From: Hormiphora californensis | Taxonomy: Eukaryota; Animalia; Ctenophora | Assembly (NCBI GenBank): GCA_020137815.1 | Contig: CM035362.1 | Coordinates: 1,984,001-2,048,000, forward strand | Length of the DNA: 64,000 nt | Direction of reading: 5' to 3' | In this document: positions 29,973 to 47,618 of the stretch, piece by piece | Layout of the letters: every line of letters starts with the position of its first letter | How positions within the stretch are numbered: the first letter of the stretch is position 1 | Program-made: the position numbers and the translations under genes | Notes under the pieces: model-generated | What the model was told of the DNA's origin: nothing | The model's input: only the letters and a program-made list of their open reading frames with translations | Databases searched by the model: none

Positions 29973-30681
29973 ATATTATTATTCTAAGCGGTCAAAATAT
30001 ACATAAACATTCCGTGTAGAATTATAGATGTCACATAATATATATCATGATTTAACTTGCTGCAGGGTGGTTGGAAATTATTAAGCTCATTATTACTGGT
30101 CCCACAAAGACAGTGGGACACCCTGTATGTTTCTCAGTGTCCATCTTGTTCTCAAAGAATCTGGGAAACATACGGGCGAAATAATTCCAAACCACCCCCT
30201 AAATGAACTTAAAACATAGTCATATATATAGAAATATCAATAGAGCAAAATAATAATGTTTTTTTTCAGGGGAAACAAATAAACAATCTTCTACCCAACC
30301 CTACTTTATACCTAATGGCTAAATGCTAATACCGTTCATAATTGTCATTGGAGTGCAAACACGACCCCTAAATGTCACTAAGTACTCTTATCTAGAGCCC
30401 CTCGTAGCTCTATCTTTCAATTTTACTTAAAGTTTATCTTGAAGGAACTTCTTTAACAACGATTATATAACAAACAAAGTATAGTCCATGATAGCACCAA
30501 CAATGTCTTTTTCACCTGACGGGGGAACACTTCACATATTGTACAGAACTCAGCACCTCTCAACTTTCACGGATATATATAGTTGGGCTATTTAGGGCTG
30601 CACCGATGAAAGAGAGCTTCAAACACTCTCCCCCTAATATGCACCCCTATTATAACCCCTATAACAACGCGTCAACTCCCC

Positions 30682-33600
30682 TCACACTCCATGCTCACTC
30701 TCCTTCATTAAACTTTTATTACTGGGCGGAATGTTGCCGTACTCCCAATCAAACTGATTCGTTTCCCGGATCTTGTACACGCCCTTGTCTTTGTTACGTG
30801 TCCGGCACACGATAATCAGGACAATGATTAGGATGAGGAGCGCTGCTCCCACAACCGCACCCTGCAACGGAGAAATGGAGTTAATTAACGAGGAGATAGT
30901 AATTGGGAGTTAATTGGGAGAGTTAATTGGGAAAATGAGAACTGGGGTAAATAAGAAGGTTATTGTGCATATGAGGCGATATGAGTTAAATAGGCTGGTT
31001 CAAATATTAAATTTAGATTTCAGAATACCGGAAAAAATCCCAAAAACCCAAGTATGATCAGTGATCACTGATCACTCGCACTCTCGACAAGATTTCTGAC
31101 TTTAGTGCTGTATCTCTCCCCTCAATGGGGATAGTCCCCATTGCATCAGTTTATCTTTCTCTTTTTCCCGTTCAAAACACGCTGCGAATCACACCGAGAA
31201 TACACTCTTCTGGAAACCACACACACACACTCACTATAGAACTGTTACCCCTCACGACGTTCGCAAAAGTAACCAAAAAGCTAACTGCGTGATTTGGAAA
31301 AAAGATTGTCACTACTTGTTGACAACTTGTTGACTTACTCAACAAGTCACAACAGATAACGATTCAAACTTTCTATGTTCTCAATAATCAATACTTCTAA
31401 CTTCAAATGATTATTTCTACAGTTACTGAAATTATTCTGTTTTTCAGTCTGAATAACAGGACTATAATTAAAAAATTTAATAATTAATTAATTACTGGAT
31501 AATTCAGTAATGCAATATAGTTACCAGGATAATGTAAAGATCCTTGCTCTCCCCGGATATTACTTCAGCCTCAGTTCCATTCTTAGGGGGTTCAGTGGTT
31601 GTTGGGGCGGGTGTGGGTACCACTACTGCCATTGTCTCTGAGAACCTGCAGGTGAGAGATTGGTGTGAGTCAGAGCATTGGCGGAGCGCGCGAGAACTGT
31701 GGTCAGAGCATTGGCCTGACAGGTGTGAGGACTGAGGTGGAATGAAACTGAAAAAAAAACTTATAAAAGTAAATCTAGATCAAATCTTAATCAAATCAGT
31801 AAATCTAGCTCCCTTTGAAACTGGAGTATGAAAAACAATTTCTTACCTGGGAGTCAACATGCAGCCGCTTGTGAACCCCGTACTAAAGTTACCAGTGGTC
31901 GTCACGACCATCTGTTTATCTTCACTTTGGCCGGTGTGAACAGCAAACGGCTCGTGGTGCCTGTACTTGCCTGTTAAAATTTGTTGAGTATAGGGTGGGA
32001 AACTCAACAAGTCAAAATGGTATGGAGCTGTTATAGTGGCTGTTTTGTGAGTAGCGTTCAAAATTATAGAGAACAGGCCTGGCTTTGTTGAGTCTCATCC
32101 CTTACTCAACAAGCTTGTTCTATATAACAAAAGAAAAGAGTAAATTGGAGAAGCTGAAACTTTGAATTCCTGACTGGTTTTTAGGGGTTTCCCATGTGAC
32201 TTCCTCCCATACACGACCCATATCAGGACCTCGCGAGGGGCCCGGGGACCCCATCTTGGGGTCATGATGGACCCCCTAGACCCAGCACTTCCCGATAAGA
32301 TAGAAAGCTAATTCCAACTGCATTCGATTCGTCTCGAAAAACTGATTCAGAAAAGCTCTGTGCACCATGTAGACCTTATACATGGGAAACCCCTACTGGT
32401 TTTGTTGGGTAAGGGGTTACTCAACAAGACTGGTTGCTACTACATACTGCATGCAGATATATGTAACTCTAAAAAACCTACCATCAGCATTCGTGGTGAC
32501 AATATCAAAACTGGAAATACAACCCTGGTACCCCTCCCCAATTTCAACTGTCATGGGTAGCATGAGTTTATCTGTCATTCCGGGGATGTTTCCATAATTA
32601 TCAGGACCATCATCAACCTGAGATAATTAGTCAATTAAATAATTAATTAATTAAATATTCCCACAATATTTGAAAGACAAGGCATGAGGAAACAACGAAG
32701 TGGGTGGAACTATGTGGGACTGGGAGGTGCAAAAGTGCACACTTACCTTTAGAAATAGTTTGGCTCCATGCCTCTTTATCACAACTTTGTGTGCTTTGTT
32801 ATCAGCCAGATTCACCCAAGTGTTGGTCTGAAGGGAGGGTAATATATTACGTCATTATGACGTCATATTATGACAGCTTCCAAAACAAACAATGTGACGT
32901 TCTCCGCGGCGGCAGGGTCAACTTCATCAGATATCCTGGATGCGCGCGCAGCTAAATCTCGCGCAATATCATCCCTCCCCGCCAGAATTGTGCTATCGCG
33001 CGCTACGTAAAGTTACCAACAACACAACTCAGGGAGAGCGATCTGTTGCAGCAGTAAACTGGTGAGGGAAGTGGTACATACCTTTGCAACTTTGCCATTC
33101 TCAAGCCATCCATAGACGGTTAGAACCTTTTGATAGACCTTGACAAAATAACCCTGGTCGTCACTCTGCGAACTGAAAGGTGAAGTGTCACGTGATGCCC
33201 AAATATGGTCTGTCACGTGATGCCCAAATATGGTCTGTCACGTCCAGGGGACAATGGTCCAAATGCAATTAGGTACTATACCTGCACGCTTCACTCATGC
33301 AAACACACGCTTTCTGTCGCATATAACTCTCTCTTTCTCTCTCTATCTCTCTCACTCTTTCTCTCTCCCTGCTCCCTGCTCCCACACTATCTCTCTCACT
33401 CTCTCCCTCTCTCACTCTCTCCCAGTCGCAATTCGCATACAAAAACCGCACACATATGTTGCACACACACACACTCTGACCACTCACGTAGCGTTCCTCA
33501 CAAGTGATCTGGGATAGAATGGAACTTGGGCATAACCAAAATAAAATAAAGATTACTAAAAACTCTCAGATTTAAATAGTAGTTTACTTCGTTCTTTCTC

Positions 33601-36600
33601 ATTCTCATTTCAAAACTAGTTTTCCTCACTTCACTTCGTGTAAATTGTGTCTTGTGATGCAGCAACGCCCCGGGCCACCTCAGTAAGGGGATCTTTCAGG
33701 CCCCAAAGATCCCCTCACTCAGACCCTCTTCTTCACCCCATTTAGAGAATACTAGTCCAACCCAACCCCCCTAAGGCCTCATCCCTTACATCCCATCTAA
33801 ACTCACGCTAGCTTGAAGATAGTAGCGGGGGATTCCGTTGTAGTTGGTCGAAGATAGAACATCATCTGTTCCTCATAGCTTGCTTCAAGATCATATGTGA
33901 TGTTCGAGGTACCAGTACCAGTTGTGAATTTAACTGTCCCACGACCGTTGAATGAGATACTAGATCCTGAGGGAAAGCTGGGTTAAAAAAATGGGATTGG
34001 AAATACAATTATTGGGGTTGGGTGGTTGGCAATCGTGAAAGGAGGGAGAGAGAAGGAAGGATGGAGAGAGAAGGAAAGAGGGAGAGAGAATAAAAGAGTA
34101 GACCTTGGGAAACATTTATCCGCCAGTGGCTTGTTTATTTAAAGATTTTAGGCCACATAAGAACTGGGAAAGTTTCTGTTTTTGACCACAAATTGTGAAA
34201 TCTCGTGGGAAGAAAAGGAAACACCAGCCTCTAAAACCATTCTAAAAAGTTTCCCGCTCATTTCAATCTTCTCACATCGATAACTTCCTATATACATGTG
34301 AATAAATCCCCCTCTTTCTCTCCATTCTAATTCTCTACATATCTCTCTCTCTCTCTCTCTTCTCTCTATGTGATACATAAATCTAAACTACACAGAACTT
34401 GCCAGTCTCTGTAGTTTTGTGTGTAAACCTGTCTAGATAGCATTATATACTGTCTAGGTTGTATTCAATAACACGCATGACAGGTGAGCTCTGAGAAACA
34501 AAATACAGTCAGACCCATTTACCCCTTTTTCCCCAAACCCCTTCCCAGAAAACCCTTCCCCGGGGCCCGTTCGGGTTTTCCCATTAAGTTTTTTGTCCAA
34601 AAATTAAAAAAATTGTTGGTTTGATATTAACACCCTATTTGGTATATTTTTATAGATCCGGGGAAAAATTTATTTGATAAAAAAAAAGGGGGGGGAAAAA
34701 TCCCTTTTGGGGGGGAAAAAATTTGGGGGGGGGGGGGTTTTTTGTGGGGCAATAAATAGGGGGTTTTTTTATGGAAAAAAAAGGGGGGGGGGGGAAAAAA
34801 TTTTTTTGCCAAAAACGATGGATTGGAGTGTGTTTTTTCCCTTACTCAGTACGCAGGGTTCCCTTACCCCCAAAAAAAGGGAAAAGAGGATGAAAAAGGG
34901 GGGGGGGAGTGGTTTTTAAAACTTACGGGGCTTTCCCCCCAAACCCCTTCCAAATTTCCCCCTCCTCTTTTATTTCCCCCCTCTTCCTTCTCGTCCCTCT
35001 TCCTTTTCCCCTTTTCCCCTTTTTCCCTTTTTCCTTCTCTCACGGCCCCCTCCATCCCCTTTTTTCCTTCCCCTCTTCCCTCCCTCCTAACCTTCCCCCT
35101 TAAACTTCCCAACCCGGGCCCCTTTTTTCATTAAACTCATTCTTTTTCATTTTTCCGGGCTTCCTTTTTTTCTTTTCTTCTTTTTTTTTCCTCTAATCCT
35201 CTAAACTATCCTGGATTTGGAAAATTTTTAAAAAATCCCGGGAAACCTTCCCCTTTTTCATCCCTTTTAAAACCAAACCCCCCTCCCCCCTTTTTCCAAA
35301 AAATTTTTTTTTGGGGCCCCCCCTCTCTCCTTTATTTCGGCCTCGCTCCTCTCCCTTTCCTCTCGTTTTTTTCCTTTTTAATCCTTTTTTTTCAATCTTC
35401 TTTCCCTCCTTTTATTTCTCTCTTTTTTAATTTCCCTCTTTTCCCCCCCCTCCTTTTTTCCCCCAACCCCGCTCCCGCCTTACACCGGCACCCGGCCAAA
35501 CCCATTTCCCTCTTGTACTCTTTTCCTCCTCCTCCTCCCTTTTTCCCTTTTCCTCTTTGGCTTCACCTTAAATTTTCCCCAAATTTTCCCCCCAAATTTC
35601 CTTTTTTTTTGTTCTGAACCTCTCCCCTTTTCTTGTTTTTTTTTAAAACCCTTTTCCCTTTTCATTCTCCTTTCTTCTTCCCCCTCTTTTCGCTCCCCCC
35701 CCCTTCCCCCCCCTTCTTCCCTTTTTTCAGTTTCTTCAACCTCCCTCCTCACCTTTTATTTCTTTCTTTTTCCGTCCTCTTCTTCCCCTTTCCCTCCTTC
35801 CTTACTCTCCTTTCTTCACCTTTTTTTTTGTTTTGTTAAATTTTTCCCTTTTTCTCCCCCGTTTGTCACCCAAATACCCAACCAATTAAAAAGGTTTTTC
35901 CCCAAAATCCCTTTTTGGGTTTTCCCCCCAAAAAAAAACCCCTTTTTTAAATTTTTTTCCCTTTCTTTAAGGGGTTTGGGCCCCCCAATTTTTTTTTTTT
36001 TCCCCCTTTATACTAAAATTTAATTTTAAACCCCCCTTCATAAAAATTTTTGATTTCCCCCTTTTTGCTTTCCGGGTTTTTTTTGGGGGTTTGGTTTTTT
36101 CCCCCCTTTTTTTTCCAAAAATTTTTATTTTTCCCCCCCTTCTTTTTTTTTTTCCTAAAGCCCCCCCCCTTTTCCCCCTTTCTTTCCCCTCCCCCTTTTT
36201 CCTTTCTTTTTCTCTTTCCCCTTTCCCCCTTTCCCCCTTCCCCCCCTTTTTGTTTTTTCCCCCCCCGGGCCCCCTTGGGGTTAAAAAAAGGGGAAAAAAG
36301 GGCCCGGGGGGGGGGGAAAACGGGGGTTTTTTTCATATTATGATAGTATGTTTAAATTTTTGGGTGGGTTTTAAAAAGGGAAAATGAAAATAGGAAGAAG
36401 AAAAAGGTTTTTTTTTTTTTTTTTTTTTTAAAAAACCCTCCCCCCCCTTTTCGCTGCAAAATATAATACAGGGGGGCACTAAATAAAATCCCCTCCTTTT
36501 TTTTTTTTCCCCCCTTCTCTCGCTTTTTCCCTTTTTTTCCCCTCCAAGTGACATCACCAAGTGAACAAACAACAAATTCCCCGGGCCCCCTTTTTCCCTT

Positions 36601-39259
36601 TTTAAGAGATAGCACTTTGAAAAGAACTCTTTTCGCACATAATAACCCGGAAAATATTTTTATTGGCTGGAATACTTTAGCCACAAATGCTCTGCGAAAC
36701 GATCTCTTGATTCAACTCTCCATGTAACTCCATTTTCTTATTTTCCTGGTTTTTCAGTTTTTTTCCCATTTTATCTTTTTTCGGTATGACAGGAGCAGGG
36801 TTCCAACTCCACAATTATGGTACTAATTGTCTCAAGTCATTAGCCCCCTTATTGTTTCTTCATCCCTCTCTACCATTTCCTAGCCCGGTTCGTGAGCCCG
36901 CGACTGGTCATGAGAAATCGTTACTAGAAGGTCCTATTAGCGGTCTGCGGTTAGAATCTAAGAGAGATAGTGAAGAAGGAGAGAGAGAGAGAGGATAGAG
37001 ATAGAGGAGAGATAGTATGAAGACTGAAGGTAGGTAAACGATAGTACTGAGTCTATTTCTGGGTTTTAAAAAGCCATATTCTTTACCAGATATAGATTAA
37101 CCTAAAGTGGAGAAGTTTCCCCCTTTTGGGAATTTTTGGCCACCTAAACGTCCTAATTTGTTTATTCCTGCTTTTCAATAAAAACCAAAAGACACCCTAA
37201 TACCTCCAGTCATTTTGAAGATAATTAAAAAGGACAAGAAAAAAATATGATGAGGGGGGGGGGGGCTGGGTATTTTGTGGGACAAGTAATAACTCAAGAA
37301 AATCAATAATATTTGGGGGTAATAAACACACATACCTTTGCACTGTGGAACATCACAATACTGGGCAGGCTCCTCTGCATTATCGACACTACACCAGGGT
37401 CTGTCATACTGGTCAGGGTTTGGGTTCCGGCAGTAGTTCTCCGCTAGTCGGTACCGGTCAAAACTGGAAAAGAGGTTTTAATGCAAAATAGATAGGATTG
37501 GAGATAGATTTAGGGTTCACAGGATGGGGGTTTAGACAGGTCATACGGTTGTAGAGCTGGATTTTAATTTATCGGCTCATTTTGGACTTAGGAATTGTAG
37601 TTGGTTCGATAGGAACTGGAAGGGGGGTTGGTCAAAAGGGGCTCATTAAATCTCGGGAATCTCTCAATCAGGAGAGACAAAATCAAGAGAGAGTAATCAC
37701 ACCCTTTCTTTCGCACACACCACACGGACACATTCTCACTCGCATTCACTCTTATCAGGGATTATGATAATCATGGCCTGGCCCACGTGTCACAAAAAAA
37801 AGATAGGAAAAAGATAGGTCTGACACACGCACACAGGGAGAAAAAGATAGATCTCAAACAAACATTACCCAATCATTGAATACTGCTCAACGTATGCTCT
37901 GAGAGTGGGTTATATATGTATGTCGTGTGGGGGGAGAATATTTTATCAGAAAGTTATAACTTGGCAACTAAGAAAATATTAAACATACCAATGCATGATT
38001 CGGACTACCCTGAAATTCTCGAGCAATACAATGATTCTCACCTGTAGATGGATTTATCCCAGGCAATACAAGACTCGCCCTTTTCTGTTACACTGACGCT
38101 GCCTTGATAGTCGAAAACCGTACCCTCGGTCAATATAACAATCGGTAGCTAGTGAGGGGAAATATGTGTTAGTTAGAAATATAATGTTGATTTCAAGACT
38201 CCCAAAAACCGGAATGTTTTCATTCCTCTTACTTCAAAAAATAAATTGTCAGGTGAGTCAAAATAATTATTGATATGTTGAGCGGGTGTGAGCTGAATTT
38301 TGATGAGAGTCAGTCATTTTGAACGTTATTATAGCAGCGGTCTTCTGTCAAATCAAGCTGATTGATTGTCTCAGTCTCTCTTTTTTTCTCTCTCTCTCTC
38401 TCTCTCTCAATTTCTAATAACCTTAGTAAGGAGGCGTTGAAAAGCAGCTGAGATAGAAAGAGCTCAGAGATAGAGAGGAAGGAAGAGAGTGAGATATAGA
38501 GGCCATCAGAGAGTAGCTCAAATAGAGTACTGACAGGGTACTTGAGTAGGTGTGAGCGTGTGCTCTAATCCAGGAAACTTCCCCTAAACCAAGTTTAAAG
38601 GGCATCTTTGACAGAAATAAAAATACCGCCAAGAACGGAGCCCCAATACCGCCAAGACATGATACACGGAAGAAGTGTGACCCCTTGCAACAGCCATCTC
38701 TCTCTGTGTGTTTCAAATGCCACCATCCAGCTCTCGGGCCCGGAAAAGTGAGGGGATGTTTATGTGAAATGTGTGGGAGGCAGGGAGAGAGATAGAGGAA
38801 GGAAGGGAGAGATGGAGAGAGGAGGGGAGAGAGAAGGGCCATGGGCATGTATTTTTCAGAAACTGACACACCCAAAGATGGGAGTAACATCTAGTAAAAA
38901 CATTGCATGAGAGATGAGATGGAGACATAGCGAGAGAAGAGAAAGAGGGAGAGAAATCGGTAAATAAGAGGGAGGGAGAGGGAGAAAGAGAGAGAGAAAG
39001 ATAGAGAAGATGAATCATGGTAATCGAATACCATGTGTTTAGCGTGTAGTGATACATGTCAAGAGGAGGCCAATATATAACGCCAGTAACATTTAATGTC
39101 AAACTAATATCACTTTGGATTGGAACATTTCGGGATGTTTGATTTTGGTTTGGCGATGTTTCAAGGTGAAAGGAGTCTCCACTTTTCTAACCCCCCTCTC
39201 TTCTCCGTGGTCAATCACAAAATAACTCACCCGTTTAGAAGGAGAAAGGGGTGAGTGAA

Positions 39260-39343
<84 letters not shown>

Positions 39344-42300
39344 TGAGAAGATGGTTTAAACACAAGCCTCCCCAGTACATGGTATATTAAACAAACTGCA
39401 GACAACAATAATCACGTGACCTAAACCCTGGATGCTGATTGGCCGAGAGTCCCCATTCTCTCCCCTGATTGGCTTCTCTCAGTGGTCACGTGATCTGCTA
39501 TCATGTGATCAATGTTGACGGCAATGAATTGTAAAGCGCACAGGGGCCACCAAAAGTTTCTATTGCTAGATCACTGTTTAGAACAAAAGCTGAATTTAAA
39601 AACTTGGGGCCTTGAGAAGAGAATATTCTTTTGTTTAAGTGCTTGGATAATTACACTCTAGCTAGCTTCTAAAACGCTTCGATAACTCTCACTATATCTC
39701 TATTTCTTTCATGTTATATTGACAGGCACTAAGAAGACACTACAAAGACTTTTTGCCCCCCCCCCCTTTCCATACATTGGTAGGAGTCCCCGACATAGCA
39801 GGTTCTTGCGCTCTGAAAGAAATGAGAATAGGGCCAGGCCAATGCTCTGACAGCGACATAGGGCGCTGTCCGAAAGTGCATGACAGTTTATTATTGATTA
39901 TAGCCAGGCTGATTTCTTTAATTCTTGCATGCATAGATCATGATCAAAAACATTTTACTGTTTTTAGAATCACCCAAGGAATTTAAATTAGCGGGAGAGA
40001 CAGAAAATTGGCGGGAGAGACAAAAAGAGAAGTTGATTGAAAGAGAGATCGTCTGTGAAGGTGGAAATAGATCAACCCCCCACCCCGCCACCAATGTTTA
40101 TCCAAGACTGCTTGACCCTTGTCCTTAAGCAATTACTAAACATCTTCTGAGCCCTCCAGCCTTACATTATATCGTGTCAATCATGTACACACTTATCACG
40201 TGACTTACCGCCAAGGGCCCAATTAGCAGCCAATTAGACGGAATCAGTCACTCATGAGTGTACGGGACGAGGAAGAGAAGATGAAAGAAAGTGACAAGAC
40301 ACACATCTGCTGTGAGAGAGAGAAAGGAGAGAGGGGGAAAAATGAGAGGAGAGGAGAACGGGGGGGAGAGAGAGAAGAGAGAGAGAGATTGTTTTGTGTG
40401 TGTGAGAGGAAAAGAGAGAAGAGGAGGTGGGGGAGAGAGGGAGAGAGAGAGAGAAAAGGGGGAGAGAGAGGAGAAAAGAGAGAGAGAGAGGAAAAAAGAG
40501 AGGGGGGGAAAAAGGGAGACCAGAAAAAGAGGGGGGTTTTGGTGTGTTTATTTATGGTCTGGGAAAAATGCAAAAATTTTTATGTTTGAAACAAAAATTT
40601 GGCCCCGGAAAGGGGTTAAAAGGAAAACCAAAAAACCAATGAATATTCAAACGTTTAACAGAAAAAAAGAATTAAAAATATTTGGGTTTTCATAATGTTT
40701 TCAGACCTGTTTTTGTCTACACTTTCAGAGAAAAGGAAAAGGAATGAAAAGCCCGGAAAATAAAATGTTTGGTTGAAAAAAAATTTTCCATAAAACATTA
40801 GGTTAAAAAAAGAAAAAGAACTTCAAAAACGGGCCCCCCCCCTTTTAAACCAGAACTTCGGGAGCCCCAAGAGTGTGGAGACCCGCCCCCCGAGAAAAAG
40901 GGTTCCCCAAAACCTAGGGGCCCGCATAAGGAGGGAGGAGGGAAGAAGGAGAGAGAGAGAAAGAGGAGAGAGAGAGAGGAGAGAGGGGGAAAAGGAGGAA
41001 GGAAGGAGAGGCGGAATCCCCGCCAAGCAGACCACAGGGGCGGGGAATTTCGGTCGGGCGGGGGAGTTGTCATGCATTCTGACACCGTTTTACCATTTTA
41101 CTGCCCACTGATCCACAACCTCAACCTCTCTATCCTATTCCTTTCTCTCTCTTTGCCGCAAAGTATGTGAATAACACAACGATAACAGTTTTGGGCAACA
41201 CGGCTGAGCTTAGTAAGCAAACTGTTTACACCCAGTTTATTCTACGGATTGTCAAGTAAAATCTGATCGGAATAAAAAACACCGATATGGGCATTTTTTT
41301 AACTGTGCAAAAAATTTTTCCGAAAATGACATTTAAATTCAGTTTTTTTCGACTTTTATCATAGTTTTTTTCAAAAAAAAAATTTCCAAGAAATTATGGT
41401 AAAAATGTAAGGGAATAGATTTAAAAGGGAAAAAAAATTAAAAAAAAAAGGAGGTGCCCGGTGACCTTTTGCAAAAGGTGTGCCCCTTCCGTAAATTTTT
41501 AAATTTTTTTTAAAATTTTCGAAATATGCAAAAATGCCAAAATTTAAAAAACCCTTTTAAAATATGTAAACAAATACTAATCTATGGGTGAACCCGGGGT
41601 TTTAAAATTTTACTTTTACAGCTCTTTTAGCCCGGAGCACCTCAGTTTCACGACTTTTTCCTAGTAGATACTTTTAGTAGACTCAAAACCATCATTTGTA
41701 CCAAAAAAGTTCCAAAAATTTTGCTCAATGAGTGAGGTGCACCCAAAAAACTGTATTTTCTTTCAAACGCTAATTGCACCTCACTCAGTGAGTATATAGT
41801 TCTAAAAGTGGCCTTAATTTGCTCATATGACATCCCCAAACACTACCTAATCGATTCCAAGGTCATTGCTCAACCTGTGAGGTGCACTGGAGAAGTAGGT
41901 AAATATGTCATTTTTTGAGGGTCTGCACCTCACTCGCTGAGTAATTTTTAGGGCAAATTTTAGGTAAATCAGGAGGGAAATTGTCTAATCTTGCTTTATG
42001 CCAAGTTTCAATTCTTTATTTACTCATTGACCCCTAGTGAGTAAACTTTTAGCTCTAAAATCGGCTTGCACCTCACCAAATGAGTAAATTTTTCCATGGT
42101 TTTTCACCTCATCTGATGAGTGAGAAATATCCCCACCATTTCTGAAAGTTTGGAGATTTTTGATCAAACGGTATTTCTACAAATCGGGGGCACCTCACGA
42201 TAGCACCTCACGGCGTAGAAATGCTATAGCACCTCACTGGAGTAAGCTAGAGACTTCGTTCTTTCACTAAATTGAACTTTTAATATTTCTCGATTTTTTG

Positions 42301-42592
42301 AGGTGCTGAGTAAATTTCCAGTGGCCACAGCTATTTTGCTATGATCATTTGAAAAAATTTGGTAGTTGCACAAGTTAAAAAAAAAATGACCATATCCCCT
42401 ATAATTACTGCCCAAAGATGTGATCCTCAATTCAGTCAATATTCCAAGTAATGGGCGGAAGCTCCAACCAATTTCAACCTTTTAAATTAAATGGAACACT
42501 AACTTCAATTTGTAAGCATATTTTCTTAATCCCTTCAATTTGAAACATGGAAGCTTGTATAAAATACAAGACACTAATTAAGCTCTCAAACA

Positions 42593-42650
<58 letters not shown>

Positions 42651-42655
42651 CCCCG

Positions 42656-42723
<68 letters not shown>

Positions 42724-43144
42724 ATTTACGCCCAAGCTGTATGACATGTAGAGCACCTTGGAATTTCTCTGCTAATTATCCAGTCTAATGGAAGTCACCC
42801 AATTACCGGGATAATTTGAAATAAGAATCCACCTCGCCCTACTGTGTGATTTTAGTGAGGACAAGAAAACTCCGAAAGTAGCTAGGACAGATTGGGATAA
42901 TTTTTTGAAAGTCCCAAATTTAAGTTGTCATTGTATGAATTTCATGTTAAAACCTGGAATCTGAATCCAAGAATCCTGGTCATGGTTGAATATATTGTTT
43001 TGAACCAAACTCCCGAATTTCGGCATTATCGGAACTAATGATCTGTAGATCACGTGACACTCCAGACCATCTTCTGATGCTGAGAGCTGCTGCACTTAGA
43101 GGGAGCCATTTACGTCTAATTACACTTTGGGGGAATGAGGGATG

Positions 43145-43198
<54 letters not shown>

Positions 43199-43206
43199 TG
43201 AGAGTG

Positions 43207-43248
<42 letters not shown>

Positions 43249-43791
43249 GAGAGAGAAGAGAGAGAGAGAGAGAAAAAGATAGATGCCTAGAAAGAAGTCC
43301 TAAGAATATATCAGGTCTGTGTAAACCTCAGCATTGTATACATCACACACATAGCACGGTTAATTGTTTACCCACTTATTATATATGTGTGTGTGTGTGC
43401 CAGGGTACTACACTTCCCTAGTGAGGCACGTGGTGGTTACCATAGCAACCAGGGGTGTCGCTAACAAGAGAGATCACCAGAGTGAGCGACTGACTTTAGA
43501 ATTGTAAGTTGGAAAAACCTTCACGGTGACAGGAACAGGGGGTATGTGTAATTGAGAACTGGTAGGGAGAGATTGATAAGGGTCCCCGGGGGAATTAGGT
43601 GCTGATAGGTGGGTATGGGAGGAAGGGGGAAATTTAACCATGAGTACTGTTTATTTTTAGCATCGACCAAAACTTGAAAAATTATCGATTTTGAGAACTG
43701 AGTTTTTGGTAAGCTTGGTAGTTTTCTCACAAACCCGTGTCCGTGTAAGTACACTGGCCATTGTTATGCTTACACTGCTAAGTTACGAGCA

Positions 43792-43846
<55 letters not shown>

Positions 43847-46800
43847 CCTCTCTCTCTCTCTCTGTTTTTTTTCTTTACCCGGGATAAAATGAGAGCTCAT
43901 GTTTATTTTTGTTTGTCGTCCGCCAGGGGGATTGGATTGAGTCTTTGGATCTAAACCTCTCGTCTGAGTCTTTTAAACCCTCCCTTTCTCGCCCTTTTCC
44001 CCCCCTACTTCTTGCACGAACCTACCTCTCTCTCTTTTATGGATGTCAATGTTTCAGCTCTGCCAAAACAGGCCAATGCCCGGGCTTTTCCAAGATGTGT
44101 GTATACACCGCCCAAGACTCTCCCTCTCTCCGCAAGCTCTCATCCATTCCCATTTCTTATGCCGAGTGTCCAGAATAGAGAAGCATAGAAGAAAGGAGGG
44201 GAAAAGAGGAGGAGGAAGAAGAGAGAGAGGAGAGAGAAACGAGAGAGAGAGAAAGAAGAGAGAGAGAGAGAGAGAACGAAGAGGATGGACGGGGGAAGAG
44301 AGAAAGAGAGAGAGAAAAGAGAAGTGTGGAAGGGGGAAGAGAGAGAGAAGGGGAGAGGAGGAGAGAAGAGAGAGGCGAGAGAAGAGATGGAAGAGAGAGG
44401 AAGAAAGAGAGAAAGAAGGGACAGGAAACGTTAGCGCATTACTCGGCATGAGCGGTAGCAAACACCCGAGCAAGAAGTACGCTACAATACACACACACAA
44501 TGGTGATAGAAATGGAATGTATATACCCCCATTCCCACCCTTAACAATTCTAATACATCAGCTAGTATTATATTGTTCTTTACCAGATATATACTGATGA
44601 ACAATAGATCAGGGACAAGAGAATGGGGAACAAGCATTATGTACTTTTGTGAATGAAATTCCACCCGGACCTTCTTTAGTCAGTAAACGATCGATCGTTC
44701 AATGTTTTAAGAAGGTCTCGATCTGATAGAGACGAGCTAAATCAAAGAAAGCGCCAATTTGAGCTAATAGGACATACTAATATGAACAATTATGTAGGCT
44801 AAATCATGCTCTCCACCGATACTAACATATTTTCGCTTTTTTGGCGGGCCTTTATTTACAAGGGGGGAGGACCAGATGTACATAATTGACTACCATTAGA
44901 ACATGGTTTATATCTGAGTGCTGTGTTTGGAGGATGACCTGCTCAATTTAGCATGGTTTACATCTCAAAACGCACTTAGTGGAATTTCCCTACCAGAAGA
45001 AGCACCTTCCATTACCACTTTTATACGCTACAAAATTTGTCGTTTTAAGCTGTCACACGATGGAGAGAGAGGGAGAGAGAAAGAGAGAGGGGGGGAGGGA
45101 GAGACAGAGAGAGAGGGGGAGAGAGGAAGAGAGAGGGCGAGAGAGAAAGAGAGAGAGGGCGAGAGAGAATTTCAGTTATACCACATTTGGAATATACACT
45201 AGGTTCAAATCGCTCAAGGTAGCTAGTACAGAGAGAGTAAAATCTTTCTCATAACCTTTTGGTGTGTTCTGCAGTGGGGGACACAGCGTGGAAGAGAGGG
45301 AGAGATAGGGAAATAGAGAGAGGGAGAAAGAGAGAGAAAGATAGAGATGAAGGGAAAGAGAGAAAGAAAGATAGAGAAAGATCGAGAGATAGAGAGCGAG
45401 AGAGTATACAGCTCTTACTCGAGTAAGAGCTGCTAGAGGTCGGAGTGTGGCACTTCCCTCACCAGGTTCTACTCGGACACCAACTCGAGGCTGCTGCTCC
45501 CCACTTCCCACTCAGAAATGATGTGCACACTCTCACACTTAATATCTTCATAGATGCAGTATTACGTGACCACAAAGTGATGTGAAAATATAAAACAGAT
45601 CTATGAGTCCTTGTTTCACAAGACTGTTACATACATTATGATCTTATGTGTGTCCGTCAAGTTTTGTCAAGTTTTGTCAAAGCTTTAGAAGAGCAAAAGA
45701 TAGAAGTCGGTGGTCCCTAGTAAATTTCCATTCGTGATGATTTATGGAAAATAATAATGCCCCCTGTAAAAAACCAACAGATCTATTAAAAAATACTCAC
45801 GAGCATATGAACACGTTTCCACGACTTCCGTGGCTCGACAGCGTTTAAAGAAAACATCGAATGTGTCTGTATCAGCACAATTTTGTGAGGTTGCTTTCTT
45901 GTTCATGCATGAGTAGTACTTTCTACAGCTCATTGGGTCAGCCTCCTTTGACTGACGGTCACTTTCACACTGGAAACCTGTTGGGAAACAAGGCTATAAA
46001 ACTAGGATTGGAAACCTGTTGGGAAACAACGCTATAAAACTAGGATTGGAAAGCTAGTAGAGTCGATAACTACATCGACCTCTCCCAATTGTTCCAGTTT
46101 TTGTCACATCTGTTTGGAGCCTCGACACGACCTCTAAACAGCTGTTACTTTTTCACAAACTGTTTTCATCTTGGTGTAATCAGCAGTTGAAATGTTGCTG
46201 ATCATAACAAAAACCTGACTAAATTTTTTCAACTTGGGGTAAAACCATGGGTGTCAAAAGTTAGCTCTAGGTCCCCTGAGTAACCATCCGGAGACTCTAA
46301 GAGATATTTCAAGCCGTTCTCCCGTAATCATTAATCCCGGTGGAGAAAAAAATACAATGCGGACGTACGTGAGCGCTGGCAGGCTGCTTACATGTTATTG
46401 TATGTCTCTCACTCTCTCTGGAAAAACCGCACGTGCGGTTGCGCCGCGCGAGATAACTCTTTCTCAAGGGGGAGAAAAGAGAGAGACGCACATTAACGTT
46501 ATACATTAAAGTTGAGGTTGTAGGCAATTGCACGTACGTCCATACTCAAATATGTGCTCTACCGGGATTAATGATTACAGGAGAACGGCTTGAAATATCT
46601 CTTGGAGTCTCCGGATGGTTACTCAGGGGACCTAGAGCTAACTTTTGACACCCATGGTTTTACCCCAAGTTGAAAAAATTTAGTCAGGTTTTTGTTATGA
46701 TCAACAACATTTCAACTGCTGATTACACCAAGATGAAAACAGTTTGTGAAAAAGTAACACCTGTTTAGAGGTCGTGTCGAGGCTCCAAACTGATGTGACA

Positions 46801-47036
46801 AAAACTGGAACAATTGGGAGAGGTCGATGTAGTTATCGACTCTACTAAGCTGAAAAGGGGAGAGGGGGTGGTGCATGTATCTAGCAAATTGTCTACAAAA
46901 CATGTCTGGCGACTGAAAAAGTACCTAGATATAGGATTTAGGAACACATTTTAATAGGGATTACAATTCAAGACTCTTCATTACCTATCGTTCCAGGTAG
47001 CAGGTAGAGCAATAATATCACAGTCGTTGGTAGCAT
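30682..47036 (-). CDS. Neurexin/CASPR-family-like type I membrane protein: signal peptide, chitin-binding type-2 (CBM14), kringle, laminin-G, Thr/Pro stalk, TM, 4.1m motif, PDZ-type C-terminus; about 451-485 aa
   Basis: Exons (all GT-AG): 47036-46985 (MLPTTVILLLYLLPGTIG); 45977-45801 (C-x13-C-x5-C-x9-C-x12-C-x8-C); 38148-38042 and 37463-37336 (DCY..DYQGSVSVT..CIAW / NYCRNP..PWC..YCDVPQC); 33966-33807, 33172-33082, 32827-32747, 32617-32482 and 31970-31847 (SFNGRG..FYLRPT..LADNKAHKVVIKR..LKVDD..YQGCIS..C); 31645 (or 31747)-31525 (PTPAPTTTEPP); 30861-30682 (TM, RTRNKDKGVYKIRE, ...ESEHGV*). All phases join if one extra base near 38114-38117 is removed. Confidence 0.85.
33186..33243. repeat. 25-bp tandem unit carrying CACGTG and CCAAATATGG; related array at 55488-55550
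   Basis: tgtcacgtgatgcccaaatatggtc x2.3. A 26-bp variant catcgcgtgatgcccaaatatggcaa x2.4 is at 55488. Confidence 0.8.
34520..36650. other. Probable low-quality assembly segment (homopolymer-inflated)
   Basis: Abrupt switch to long A/C/G/T runs, with (CT)n tracts degraded into C/T homopolymers. A similar stretch is at about 40550-41650. Confidence 0.75.
45971..46052. repeat. 38-bp tandem duplication covering the splice acceptor of the chitin-binding exon
   Basis: tggaaacctgttgggaaacaa(g/c)gctataaaactaggat at 45971 and 46009. Confidence 0.85.
46055..46847. mobile_element. Long-arm palindromic MITE, TAG...CTA termini, 3-bp TSD (Academ-like hallmarks)
   Basis: agc|tagtagagtcgataactacatcgacc ... 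ggtcgatgtagttatcgactctacta|agc. Arms about 290-315 bp and nearly identical. Lies in intron 1 of the neurexin-like gene. Confidence 0.9.
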
Positions 47037-47618
47037 TGTAATGTATTTGCTGTAAAGTTGGTGCAATCAATTACAAAGAGGGGCATTATATAAAACAGAG
47101 GGAGAGGGGATTTGGTGCAAGTCATGCATATATTTATCAAGTTAATGGTCACGGCTGGTAACGATAATCAATGCCTGTAACACATGTATATAATAACGAA
47201 AGAAGTGGACAGTGATACAGAGTGCAGACAAGAATCAAGAGTCAAGTCAAAATGATCATTTCATCTCCTAACAAACGTAACAAATCCAGAAGTACGTTTC
47301 ACAAAATTGGATGAAATTATTAGTTAACTGTCTGAAAAGAATAGAATGGGCGATGGCTCCCACACCAAGTACCAATGCAGCAGGCAACTTCAAAACGATG
47401 TGCCGGGGGGGGGGGGGGGGGTGTGCCCGCACTAGAGAACACTTTGTAACAAACCTTGCAAATCAGTATGTAAATAATAATAATAATAATAGTAACAGTT
47501 TATATCCCGCACTGACACAGTTTGTATACAGACAACTCGTTTTCCGTAATTTGAAAGGGACTGCAGTAGACTGCCTGCTCCTAGCACGGTTCTCTGATAA
47601 CGGTGAGTTAGTGGGGAA

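What the first reader, a model, noticed from the sequence alone, without database searches (positions are those of the whole stretch)
30682..47036. Neurexin-like receptor with a chitin-binding domain and a kringle in place of the usual N-terminal LamG/EGF array
Seen: eleven phase-compatible exons, most too short for the ORF track, spell a complete type I membrane protein. It has a signal peptide, a six-Cys module spaced 13-5-9-12-8, a two-exon kringle, one laminin-G domain, a Thr/Pro stalk, a TM helix, RTRNKDKGVYKIRE and a terminal EHGV. Established: that Cys spacing fits the peritrophin-A/CBM14 chitin-binding consensus. LamG plus O-glycosylated stalk, TM, 4.1m motif and PDZ-ligand tail is the membrane-proximal signature of neurexins/CASPR. 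Inference: this is a beta-neurexin-sized adhesion receptor that could couple extracellular chitin or GlcNAc glycans (matrix, prey cuticle or microbes) to a band-4.1/PDZ cortical scaffold. I know of no described protein with this architecture. The CBM14 exon and the kringle exon pair are both phase 1-1 modules, the footprint expected of exon shuffling.
Basis: partly seen in the sequence, partly recalled or inferred. Interest (0 to 1): 0.9.

Follow-up and report, generated by a model that had tools for sequence, protein, structure and literature searches.

The report
Comb-jelly chitin-module, kringle, LamG membrane receptor
This is a real, intact gene for a small cell-surface receptor found so far only in comb jellies; it combines a chitin-binding module, a kringle and a laminin-G domain with a very conserved neurexin/syndecan-type tail, and nobody has studied what it does.

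Summary
One flaw was missed. As assembled, kringle exon 3 carries an extra T (TTTT, 38117-38114), so the frame hits a stop. DNA contigs from three runs in two studies lack that T. Without it the exons give 451 codons and one terminal stop.

All 10 listed exonic read differences are synonymous. Four full-length orthologues of 454-473 aa exist: Bolinopsis microptera, Mnemiopsis leidyi, and two sequences on intron-free contigs. Each scores above Pfam cut-offs for CBM_14, Kringle, Laminin_G_2 and Syndecan, and each ends in ESEHGV. They map collinearly on exons 2-11.

The architecture is therefore real and conserved. It was seen only in ctenophores, where databases call it 'uncharacterized' or 'hypothetical'. 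No paper describing it was found.

'Neurexin-like' holds only for a LamG domain plus a shared TM/juxtamembrane cassette. There is no EGF, EHGV is not a canonical PDZ ligand, and the kringle lacks lysine-pocket residues.

The genome is probably Hormiphora californensis. It has chitinases but no chitin synthase, so any chitin ligand would come from outside. Function and expression are untested. Interest is moderate: kringle mosaics are common in this genome.

The parts
46985..47036 (-). Exon 1: ATG at 47036-47034 and the signal peptide (MLPTTVILLLYLLPGTIG). The exon ends in phase 1 with a GT donor at 46984-83.
   Evidence: Sequence read. Length is 52 nt. The orthologues have a similar hydrophobic N-terminus of about the same length before F-x-C. 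Too short to test by search.
45801..45977 (-). Exon 2: a complete CBM14/peritrophin-A module. It has six Cys spaced 13-5-9-12-8, is 177 nt long and is phase 1-1.
   Evidence: Pfam CBM_14 E 3.2e-6, 27.6 bits against a 22.1 cut-off, profile 1-53 of 53. phmmer found 197 proteins at E<=1e-3, and the four top multi-stretch hits I scanned are CBM14-repeat proteins. PDB matches are 8in3 at E 1.5e-7, squid chitin-binding beak protein 3 and mite Der p 23-type allergen. Identity to the orthologues is 51-57%.
38042..38148 (-). Exon 3: the 5' half of the kringle (Cys1 and Cys2). It is 107 nt as assembled and 106 nt in the reads.
   Evidence: Two frames each hold part of the kringle. Pfam Kringle E 4.9e-4 for the downstream piece. 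tblastn of the orthologues gives two HSPs in different frames that overlap at 38114-38133.
38114..38117 (-). TTTT run holding one T more than the sequencing-run contigs show. As assembled it shifts the frame into a TAA inside exon 3.
   Evidence: read-laying table 4 reports 'left out 1' at 38114: X1 49 of 49, X6 241 of 241, X5 236 of 902. Removing it gives 451 codons with no internal stop. The orthologues read G-F-D/N-Y-Q-G across this point.
37336..37463 (-). Exon 4: the 3' half of the kringle (NYCRNP...PWC...YCDVPQC). It ends in phase 1.
   Evidence: Pfam Kringle E 3.3e-9, 37.4 bits against 34.3, profile 41-79. PDB plasminogen E 7.6e-26. The three listed read differences here are synonymous.
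33807..33966 (-). Exon 5: start of the LamG domain.
   Evidence: 53-60% identity to the orthologues. Two synonymous read differences.
33082..33172 (-). Exon 6: LamG.
   Evidence: 62-66% identity to the orthologues. Two synonymous read differences.
32747..32827 (-). Exon 7: LamG (W-x-x-L-A-D-x-x-x-H-K).
   Evidence: Pfam Laminin_G_1/2 is weak on this exon alone, E 0.07-0.12. It is collinear with the orthologues, whose Laminin_G_2 scores are 25.8-31.8 bits against a 22.9 cut-off. One synonymous read difference.
32482..32617 (-). Exon 8: LamG (VDDG...GCISSFD).
   Evidence: Collinear with the orthologues. One synonymous read difference.
31847..31970 (-). Exon 9: end of the LamG domain, carrying the second LamG Cys (SGCMLTP).
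   Evidence: 55-57% identity to the orthologues.
31525..31645 (-). Exon 10: Thr/Pro-rich stalk (VVPTPAPTTTEPPKNGT) and the start of the TM helix.
   Evidence: Sequence read. The orthologues run TPRFSE straight from exon 9, which favours the acceptor at 31645 over the in-frame alternative at 31747.
30682..30861 (-). Exon 11: TM helix, juxtamembrane RNKDKGVYK motif, the invariant tail ...QFDWEYGN.PP...ESEHGV, and the TGA stop at 30684-30682.
   Evidence: Pfam Syndecan PF01034 E 1.6e-6, 28.4 bits against 25.2. At 76% identity over 58 aa to three of the four orthologues, this is the most conserved exon. The tail is nearly invariant among the orthologues.

Best explanation
Shown: this is a single-copy, intact gene under purifying selection. 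It has 11 exons over 16.4 kb on the minus strand and encodes a 451-aa type I membrane protein. The order of parts is signal peptide, one CBM14 (peritrophin-A) module, one kringle, one laminin-G domain, a Thr/Pro stalk, a TM helix and a 41-aa cytoplasmic tail. The family was found only in ctenophores: this genome, plus four orthologues, two of them named by their source (Bolinopsis microptera, Mnemiopsis leidyi). The tail is the most conserved part.

Inferred mechanism: a cell-surface adhesion or recognition receptor. The membrane-distal CBM14 binds chitin or GlcNAc-rich glycan. Because this genome has chitinases but no chitin synthase, that ligand would come from outside, from prey cuticle or from microbes. 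The kringle lacks the canonical lysine pocket, so it and the LamG domain would act as further protein or glycan contact surfaces. The juxtamembrane R-N-K-D-K-G-V-Y-K cassette (neurexin/syndecan/glycophorin-C type) and the invariant C-terminus (ESEHGV) would recruit FERM/4.1-type and possibly PDZ-type cortical proteins.

My odds:
- Real gene with this architecture: about 0.95.
- Adhesion/recognition receptor coupled to the cell cortex: about 0.6.
- Ligand is chitin or a GlcNAc glycan: about 0.4.

The frameshift in the assembly is most likely a residual homopolymer error, or one allele of a composite long-read assembly.
For: Gene model:
- All ten introns are GT-AG. With the read-supported removal of one T the exons give 1,356 nt, 451 codons and one terminal stop.
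- All 10 listed exonic read differences are synonymous.

Orthologues P0039, P0151, P0152 and P0153:
- Each scores above Pfam cut-offs for CBM_14, Kringle, Laminin_G_2 and Syndecan.
- They are collinear with exons 2-11 at roughly 36-76% identity per exon.
- P0039 and P0153 lie on contigs of 1,982 and 1,735 nt, so they are spliced transcripts.
- All end in ESEHGV, and the tail is almost invariant.

Distribution:
- Three word-indexed searches of 5.8 billion clusters returned only these four.
- Among the 150 best CBM14 relatives listed from the search of 1.84 billion representatives, only this family also has the kringle and tail motifs.

Chitin context in this genome:
- Three GH18 loci, each with a CBM14 match beside it.
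- No Chitin_synth_2 match.
- PMC11184263 reports the same for ctenophores.

The tail cassette is homologous to that of a second gene of this genome: hhalign probability 93.5%, E 2.3e-7.
Against: - No RNA evidence in this species. The only RNA-labelled run (X7, 44 Mb) has nothing on the exons.
- Chitin binding is untested. The best solved relative of the CBM14 exon is annotated as a polyphenol-binding protein, so the fold does not fix the ligand.
- The C-terminus E-H-G-V fits none of the canonical PDZ classes. G-V-Y replaces the usual G-S/T-Y of 4.1-binding motifs.
- In run X5 only part of the summed depth shows the 1-nt deletion, so a frameshifted allele cannot be excluded.
- Structure prediction failed, with mean pLDDT 31.6.
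Confidence: 0.6

Rival explanations
1. Same protein, different ligand. It is a matrix or cell-cell adhesion receptor for endogenous mesoglea or glycocalyx components. The CBM14 module has been reused for a non-chitin ligand such as a glycoprotein, a mucin-type glycan or a polyphenol-like compound. The kringle and LamG domains would do most of the binding, as LamG does in dystroglycan ligands and neurexins.
For: - The best solved relative of the CBM14 exon is a '25 kDa polyphenol-binding protein', E 1.5e-7.
- This genome has no chitin synthase, so there is no endogenous chitin.
- Kringle and LamG are generic protein-binding modules, and the genome holds at least 80 kringle matches in many mosaics.
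- No kringle or PF00051 entry appears in the held supplementary files of the Mnemiopsis tentacle/colloblast candidate study. The one CBM14 entry there is a different protein, ML16904a.
Against: - The CBM14 exon keeps the full six-Cys pattern and the family's conserved aromatic positions (C-R-K-Y-Y-S-C, T-F-D) in all five species.
- The other CBM14 modules scored highest in this genome lie beside chitinases.
- Ctenophores other than Beroe eat chitinous prey (PMC11184263).
Confidence: 0.3
2. It is a true short member of the neurexin family. It would be analogous to vertebrate beta-neurexin or the cnidarian delta-neurexins, derived from an LNS domain plus neurexin tail, and it would act in neuronal or synaptic adhesion.
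For: - The LamG, stalk, TM and PF01034 cassette are in neurexin order and the protein is beta-neurexin sized.
- The only non-kringle, non-CBM14 PDB match of P0153 among the 60 rows shown is Neurexin-1 over the TM region, but at E 0.15.
- Short single-gene neurexins exist in cnidarians (PMC11294457).
Against: - No EGF domain, and no significant match of the LamG part to any neurexin LNS.
- The feature search placed the LamG part nearest to pentraxin/Laminin_G_3 clusters, with low shared-feature counts.
- PF01034 is equally the syndecan cassette, and two other genes here share it.
- Ctenophores are reported to have a single six-LNS alpha-neurexin and no short type (PMC11294457).
- The C-terminus is not EYYV-like.
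Confidence: 0.1
3. In this individual or assembly the gene is a pseudogene or a null allele, and the extra T in exon 3 is real.
For: The assembly reads TTTT, which gives a TAA within exon 3. In X5 the deletion is shown by one contig holding 236 of 902 summed depth.
Against: - Contigs of X1 and X6 show the shorter run at all their depth, and these come from two different studies.
- All 10 exonic differences are synonymous, and there is no other stop in 451 codons.
- The assembly is described as PacBio CLR, short-read polished and haplotype-composite, with about 3% combined SNP and indel heterozygosity (PMC8527503, if the species assignment is right).
Confidence: 0.05

Closest known systems
Neurexins (alpha/beta) and the cnidarian short delta-neurexins
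   Same: Type I membrane proteins with a membrane-proximal LamG/LNS domain, a Ser/Thr/Pro-rich stalk, a TM helix and a short tail. The juxtamembrane basic-D-x-G-x-Y motif is caught by Pfam PF01034. The size is that of beta-neurexin.
   Different: - No LNS-EGF-LNS cassette. The N-terminus is CBM14 plus a kringle.
- The LamG domain is recognisable only at Pfam-family level.
- The C-terminus is ESEHGV, not a class II PDZ ligand such as EYYV.
- The reported ctenophore alpha-neurexin has six LNS and three EGF domains (PMC11294457), which this gene does not have.
- The family was found only in ctenophores.
Syndecans / glycophorin C (PF01034-type TM and cytoplasmic cassette)
   Same: The TM helix followed by a basic stretch and D-K-G-x-Y-K scores above the Syndecan gathering cut-off in the window and in all four orthologues.
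   Different: The ectodomain is made of folded modules rather than an extended GAG-bearing chain. The last profile positions, which hold the EFYA PDZ ligand, are not matched.
Peritrophin-A/CBM14 proteins and the CBM14 modules of animal chitinases
   Same: A full six-Cys CBM14 with conserved aromatic positions. In this genome CBM14 matches lie beside all three GH18 chitinase loci.
   Different: There is a single CBM14 at the tip of a transmembrane receptor, not a secreted multi-repeat peritrophin or an enzyme. None of the 150 nearest CBM14 proteins outside this family combines it with the kringle and tail motifs.
Kringle-bearing type I receptors (Kremen, ROR/MuSK). The Kremen comparison is from my own knowledge and was not tested here.
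   Same: A single kringle in the ectodomain of a single-pass receptor. In Kremen it sits beside a putative carbohydrate-binding module (WSC) and a beta-sandwich domain (CUB), a similar design logic. ROR1/ROR2 kringles appear among the PDB matches.
   Different: There is no homology outside the kringle and no kinase domain. The kringle here has N, P and A where plasminogen K4 has D55, R71 and W72.

Membership tests
CBM14 / peritrophin-A chitin-binding module | Six Cys with consensus spacing, and a Pfam PF01607 score above the gathering cut-off | tested here: met
   Spacing is 13-5-9-12-8. The window exon scores 27.6 bits against 22.1 over the full profile 1-53. The orthologues score 22.5-27.8 bits.
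CBM14 / peritrophin-A chitin-binding module | Actual binding of chitin | not testable with these tools
   Only sequence-level evidence is available. The nearest solved relative is annotated as polyphenol-binding.
Kringle | Six-Cys kringle signature, and a Pfam PF00051 score above the cut-off | tested here: met
   The 3' half alone scores 37.4 bits against 34.3. The orthologues score 34.4-68.1 bits. All six Cys are present once the read-supported 1-nt correction joins the two frames of exon 3.
Kringle | Canonical lysine-binding pocket (Asp55, Asp57, Arg71, Trp/Tyr72 in plasminogen K1/K4 numbering, from general knowledge) | tested here: not met
   Alignment to the plasminogen kringles gives PNPD for PDAD and PAQYC for RWEYC, so positions 55, 71 and 72 are N, P and A. 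P0153 also lacks the second Asp.
Laminin G / LNS domain | Pfam Laminin_G score above the cut-off | tested here: met
   Met in the orthologues, where Laminin_G_2 scores 25.8-31.8 bits against 22.9. The window's five LamG exons are individually too short (best E 0.07) but are collinear with the orthologues at 36-66% identity. The joined window protein was not scanned.
Neurexin family | LNS-EGF-LNS cassette(s) for alpha, or the beta-specific leader joined to LNS6 | tested here: not met
   No EGF match in the window's exons or in any orthologue. The N-terminus is CBM14 plus a kringle.
Neurexin family | TM plus a juxtamembrane 4.1-type motif (Pfam PF01034 region) | tested here: met
   28.4 bits against 25.2 in the window and 27.0-33.5 bits in the orthologues. 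Syndecans share this feature, so it is not diagnostic.
Neurexin family | C-terminal class II PDZ ligand (EYYV type) | tested here: not met
   The C-terminus is E-H-G-V in all five sequences. The Pfam match stops at profile position 56-58 of 64.
Neurexin family | The LamG domain groups with neurexin LNS domains in a phylogeny or structure comparison | tested here: inconclusive
   No neurexin LNS appears among the PDB rows shown, but only the best 60 of 67 and of 94 matches are listed, and almost all of those rows are kringle proteins. The feature search points to pentraxin/LamG_3 clusters with low confidence. The AF2 model was unusable. No tree was built.
Syndecan family | Extended ectodomain with Ser-Gly GAG attachment sites | tested here: not met
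   CBM14, kringle and LamG fill the ectodomain. Only the TM/cytoplasmic cassette is shared.

The most novel reading that the evidence does not exclude
This is a ctenophore-specific transmembrane chitin sensor. It would be a membrane-anchored CBM14 receptor with a neurexin/syndecan-type tail, detecting prey cuticle or microbial chitin at the cell surface of an animal that makes no chitin itself. Its almost invariant tail would pass that contact to the cell cortex. Candidate elements in the tail are the FERM-type motif, an invariant Y-G-N that fits the pY-x-N SH2 consensus (from my own knowledge), and the C-terminal ESEHGV. [quoted passage not shown]
Probability: 0.25. Interest if true: 0.7.

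Novelty: new variant of a known kind. Interest (0 to 1): 0.5.

Why it matters
[quoted passage not shown] This family is a conserved, single-copy receptor seen only in ctenophores. It is built by exon shuffling from four well-known modules, in a combination not found elsewhere in my searches.

Its cytoplasmic tail is more conserved than its ectodomain, which points to a fixed intracellular partner. Its chitin-type module sits in an animal that digests chitin but apparently cannot make it. Together these give a concrete, cheap hypothesis to test: prey or microbe recognition coupled to the cell cortex.

The finding also sharpens what 'neurexin-like' means in ctenophores. The TM/juxtamembrane cassette is a shared mobile unit carried by at least three genes, not a marker of neurexin identity.

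On the practical side, it flags a 1-nt error or variant in the reference assembly that breaks the gene model.

Tried and rejected
- **Alternative exon 10 acceptor.** The in-frame acceptor at 31747 would add 34 aa carrying two GQCSD-type repeats. I rejected it because all orthologues run TPRFSE directly from exon 9.
- **Alternative exon 3 acceptors.** None avoids the frameshift while keeping the first kringle Cys.
- **Expression.** The look-up of sequencing runs returned no RNA holder. The one RNA-labelled run (X7) laid only on simple repeats.
- **Structure.** AlphaFold2 on the 4-sequence alignment gave mean pLDDT 31.6, which is unusable. I therefore made no fold search and did not spend a second job.
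- **LamG against PDB.** The listed rows for the whole-protein and profile searches are almost all kringle proteins, and only the best 60 are shown. Single LamG exons were judged too short to try.
- **Wider family.** Three homologous-protein searches (whole protein, LamG-to-tail region, profile) found only the same four proteins.
- **Atlas feature search of the LamG part.** It gave only low-confidence pentraxin/LamG clusters.
- **Literature.** Supplements of the Mnemiopsis tentacle study hold one CBM14 entry, but it is a different protein (ML16904a, ML domain + CBM14). The injury-response paper reports early up-regulation of 'chitin binding' genes, but no gene list was readable. The Mnemiopsis immune-repertoire paper mentions none of the domains.
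- **Joined model.** The joined spliced model of the window was never sent to a search or fold tool. Searches were made exon by exon by reference, or with database proteins by id. A script walked the exon coordinates only to count codons and stops and to classify read differences, and printed no sequence.
Full report
**Observation**

I translated the minus strand of 30000-47500 in three frames and read the sequence around every candidate exon.

| Exon | Coordinates | Content |
|---|---|---|
| E1 | 47036-46985 | ATG, signal peptide |
| E2 | 45977-45801 | CBM14 module |
| E3 | 38148-38042 | kringle, 5' half |
| E4 | 37463-37336 | kringle, 3' half |
| E5 | 33966-33807 | LamG |
| E6 | 33172-33082 | LamG |
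| E7 | 32827-32747 | LamG |
| E8 | 32617-32482 | LamG |
| E9 | 31970-31847 | LamG |
| E10 | 31645-31525 | Thr/Pro stalk, start of TM |
| E11 | 30861-30682 | TM, tail, TGA |

All ten introns are GT-AG. E2 is 177 nt, phase 1-1, and its six Cys are spaced 13-5-9-12-8. Exon-by-exon Pfam scans gave:
- CBM_14: E 3.2e-6, 27.6 bits against a 22.1 cut-off, full profile.
- Kringle 3' half: E 3.3e-9, above the cut-off by itself.
- Kringle 5' half: E 4.9e-4.
- Syndecan (PF01034) for the TM/tail exon: E 1.6e-6, 28.4 bits against 25.2.
- LamG: only E 0.07 on E7, because the domain is cut into five exons of 27-53 codons.

E3+E4 total 235 nt, which is not a multiple of three. Entering E3 in phase 1 gives P-T-D-C-Y-I-D-R-G-Y-G-F and then runs into TAA. 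The rest of the kringle (D-Y-Q-G-S-V-S-V-T-E-K-G-E-S-C-I-A-W...) lies in the next frame. The switch is at the TTTT run 38117-38114. As assembled, the gene is therefore broken.

I laid the contigs of four public runs on 32400-38200. One base is left out at 38114 in X1 (49 of 49 depth), in X6 (241 of 241) and in one contig of X5 (236 of 902). X1 and X5/X6 come from different studies. With that base removed the eleven exons give 1,356 nt, which is 451 codons with a single terminal stop. The same contigs also lack one base at 38151, which turns the E3 acceptor from tAG to cAG.

The ten read differences listed inside exons 3-8 are all synonymous. The tool notes that 89 further differences were not listed. 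That pattern is strong evidence that these frames are translated and under purifying selection. The only run guessed to be RNA (X7, 44 Mb) has nothing on the exons, so expression in this species is untested.

**Orthologues**

phmmer with the CBM14 exon against 1.84 billion representatives gave 197 hits at E<=1e-3. The top rows match in many stretches, and the four I scanned are CBM14-repeat proteins. One single-stretch hit stood out: P0039, 458 aa, 53% identical, with the module at residues 20-78.

A search with P0039 added three more:
- P0151, 'uncharacterized protein LOC134824967 isoform X2 [Bolinopsis microptera]', 456 aa.
- P0152, 'hypothetical protein ACHWQZ_G019512 [Mnemiopsis leidyi]', 473 aa.
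- P0153, JGI source, 454 aa.

All four exceed the Pfam cut-offs for Kringle (34.4-68.1 bits), Laminin_G_2 (25.8-31.8), CBM_14 (22.5-27.8) and Syndecan (27.0-33.5). P0039 and P0153 sit on contigs of 1,982 and 1,735 nt. The gene in the window spans 16.4 kb, so these must be spliced transcripts that join all modules in one mRNA.

tblastn maps each orthologue collinearly on exons 2-11, with two overlapping HSPs in different frames at 38114-38133. At every exon junction the orthologues read straight through. This also favours the E10 acceptor at 31645 over the in-frame alternative at 31747.

Intron positions look conserved. The Mnemiopsis model carries two short insertions exactly where introns 3 and 5 lie in the window. 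These are probably mis-called splice sites. Two short ORF fragments from other assemblies (P0038, P0045) run from the CBM14 exon into an intron at the same place.

Two further searches, one with the LamG-to-tail region and one with the family profile, returned only the same four proteins among 5.8 billion clusters. Among the 150 best CBM14 relatives, only this family also has a kringle motif and the tail motif. Those searches see only proteins of 0.55-1.75 times the query length and depend on shared words, so more distant or differently sized relatives are not excluded.

**Organism (inference)**

The named orthologues are ctenophore proteins. G000 has 110.69 Mb in 45 contigs. The published Hormiphora californensis assembly has 110.6 Mb in 44 scaffolds, 13 of them chromosomes. 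It is PacBio CLR, short-read polished and haplotype-composite, with about 3.2% combined SNP and indel heterozygosity (PMC8527503).

GH18 chitinase matches lie on C5, C11 and C13. These are the chromosomes named in the H. californensis chitinase gene ids c5.g1106, c11.g13 and c13.g295 (PMC11184263). This fits the roughly 2% difference between the read contigs and the window. It also makes a residual homopolymer error, or an allele, a natural reading of the extra T.

**Anatomy and likely mechanism**

The mature protein, read from the N-terminus, has these parts:
- One CBM14 that keeps the family's conserved aromatic positions (C-R-K-Y-Y-S-C, T-F-D) in all five species.
- One kringle with all six Cys. 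It has N, P and A where plasminogen K4 has D55, R71 and W72, so a classical lysine pocket is unlikely.
- One LamG domain with the usual pair of C-terminal Cys.
- A Thr/Pro stalk with a conserved N-G-T site.
- A TM helix.
- A 41-aa tail.

The tail exon is the most conserved part, at 76% identity over 58 aa to three of the four orthologues. Among the orthologues R-N-K-D-K-G-V-Y-K-L-K-E-T-K-Q-F-D-W-E-Y-G-N-L-P-P and E-S-E-H-G-V are invariant. That argues for fixed intracellular partners.

The juxtamembrane cassette is homologous to that of a second gene at C3:429247 (hhalign probability 93.5%, E 2.3e-7). A third PF01034 match lies on C5. The cassette is therefore a shared unit, not a neurexin marker.

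The chitin context in this genome is as follows. There are twelve CBM14 matches, some of them beside each of the three GH18 loci. There is no Chitin_synth_2 match. This agrees with the literature: ctenophores digest chitinous prey but are not thought to make chitin, and Beroe, which eats ctenophores, has lost chitinase (PMC11184263).

My best reading is a cell-surface adhesion or recognition receptor. Its distal CBM14 would bind exogenous chitin or GlcNAc-rich glycan, and its tail would couple to FERM/4.1-type and possibly PDZ-type proteins. The architecture is shown. The ligand and the partners are inference. The best solved relative of the CBM14 exon is annotated as polyphenol-binding, so the ligand is open.

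**Comparison with known families**

Like neurexins, this protein has a membrane-proximal LamG, a stalk, a TM helix and a PF01034-type motif, and it is beta-neurexin sized. It differs in these respects:
- It has no EGF domain.
- Its LamG gave no significant match to a neurexin LNS. The only neurexin match is the TM region at E 0.15.
- The feature search pointed, with low confidence, to pentraxin/LamG_3 clusters.
- Its C-terminus is not a class II PDZ ligand.

Ctenophores are reported to have a single six-LNS alpha-neurexin that lacks a PDZ motif, and short neurexins are reported only in cnidarians (PMC11294457). I therefore do not file this protein as a neurexin. It resembles one in its membrane-proximal layout.

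No paper in the library holds kringle, laminin G, chitin-binding and transmembrane together. The papers I checked on ctenophore immunity, tentacle genes and injury response do not mention it.

**Weighting**

The genome has at least 80 kringle matches, many split at the same profile position as here. Earlier notes of this scan list several other kringle mosaics. Lineage-specific kringle shuffling is thus common in this genome, which tempers the surprise. What stands out is the conservation across divergent ctenophores, the single-copy status, the nearly invariant tail, and a chitin-type module on a receptor in an animal without chitin synthase.

**Limits**

Searches were made exon by exon by reference, or with database proteins by id. 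A script walked the exon coordinates to count codons and stops and to classify differences, and printed no sequence.
- The AF2 model was unusable, with mean pLDDT 31.6.

Noticed in passing
window 46055-46847 (intron 1): A foldback element with two 317-nt arms that are 95% complementary, separated by 159 nt. It also explains the mirrored short ORFs seen on both strands.
   Followed up: partly
window 45971-46052: A 38-nt unit repeated 2.2 times duplicates the acceptor region of exon 2. Using the upstream copy would run into a stop, so only the proximal acceptor gives an open frame.
   Followed up: partly
window 33186-33243 (intron 5, 14 nt upstream of exon 6): A perfect 25-nt tandem repeat of 2.3 copies. 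Contigs of X5 and X6 show a 'goes back 50' joint (33234>33185), meaning two more copies in other individuals.
   Followed up: no
window 38151: Read contigs of X1, X5 and X6 lack one base just upstream of exon 3, which changes the acceptor from tAG to cAG.
   Followed up: partly
window 34900-36700 (intron 4): A purine/pyrimidine-rich low-complexity stretch. Several 194-nt bins have no contig from any of the four runs (table 2). This could be a filter effect or a poorly assembled stretch.
   Followed up: no
L002 1411-2124 (G000 C3:429157-429870, minus strand): A second gene carries the same TM/juxtamembrane cassette (...RDKGSYKLEETKE...). It ends in E-W-Y-L, which looks more like a classical hydrophobic PDZ ligand than EHGV does. 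Upstream lie an acidic repeat stalk and a possible LamG end (GCFSIL). A third, weaker PF01034 match is at C5:6222789.
   Followed up: partly
G000 C11:95300-99400, C5:7041937-7043989, C13:2593640-2597860: There are three GH18 chitinase loci, each with a CBM14 match next to it. The genome has no Chitin_synth_2 match.
   Followed up: partly
G000, genome-wide: At least 80 kringle matches at E<=1e-5. Many cover only profile positions ~39-79 or 1-~40, so two-exon kringles split at the same place as in this gene are common.
   Followed up: no
P0152 (Mnemiopsis leidyi model), alignment A1 columns 114-122 and 223-230: Two short insertions (SAYLDYTYL, SLVKSDPS) lie exactly at the positions of introns 3 and 5 of the window's gene. 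They are probably mis-called splice sites in that annotation.
   Followed up: no
P0155 (cluster listing of P0038): A 490-aa protein with no visible similarity was listed as a member of the 90% cluster of the 56-aa CBM14 fragment. It looks like a database oddity, and I ignored it.
   Followed up: no
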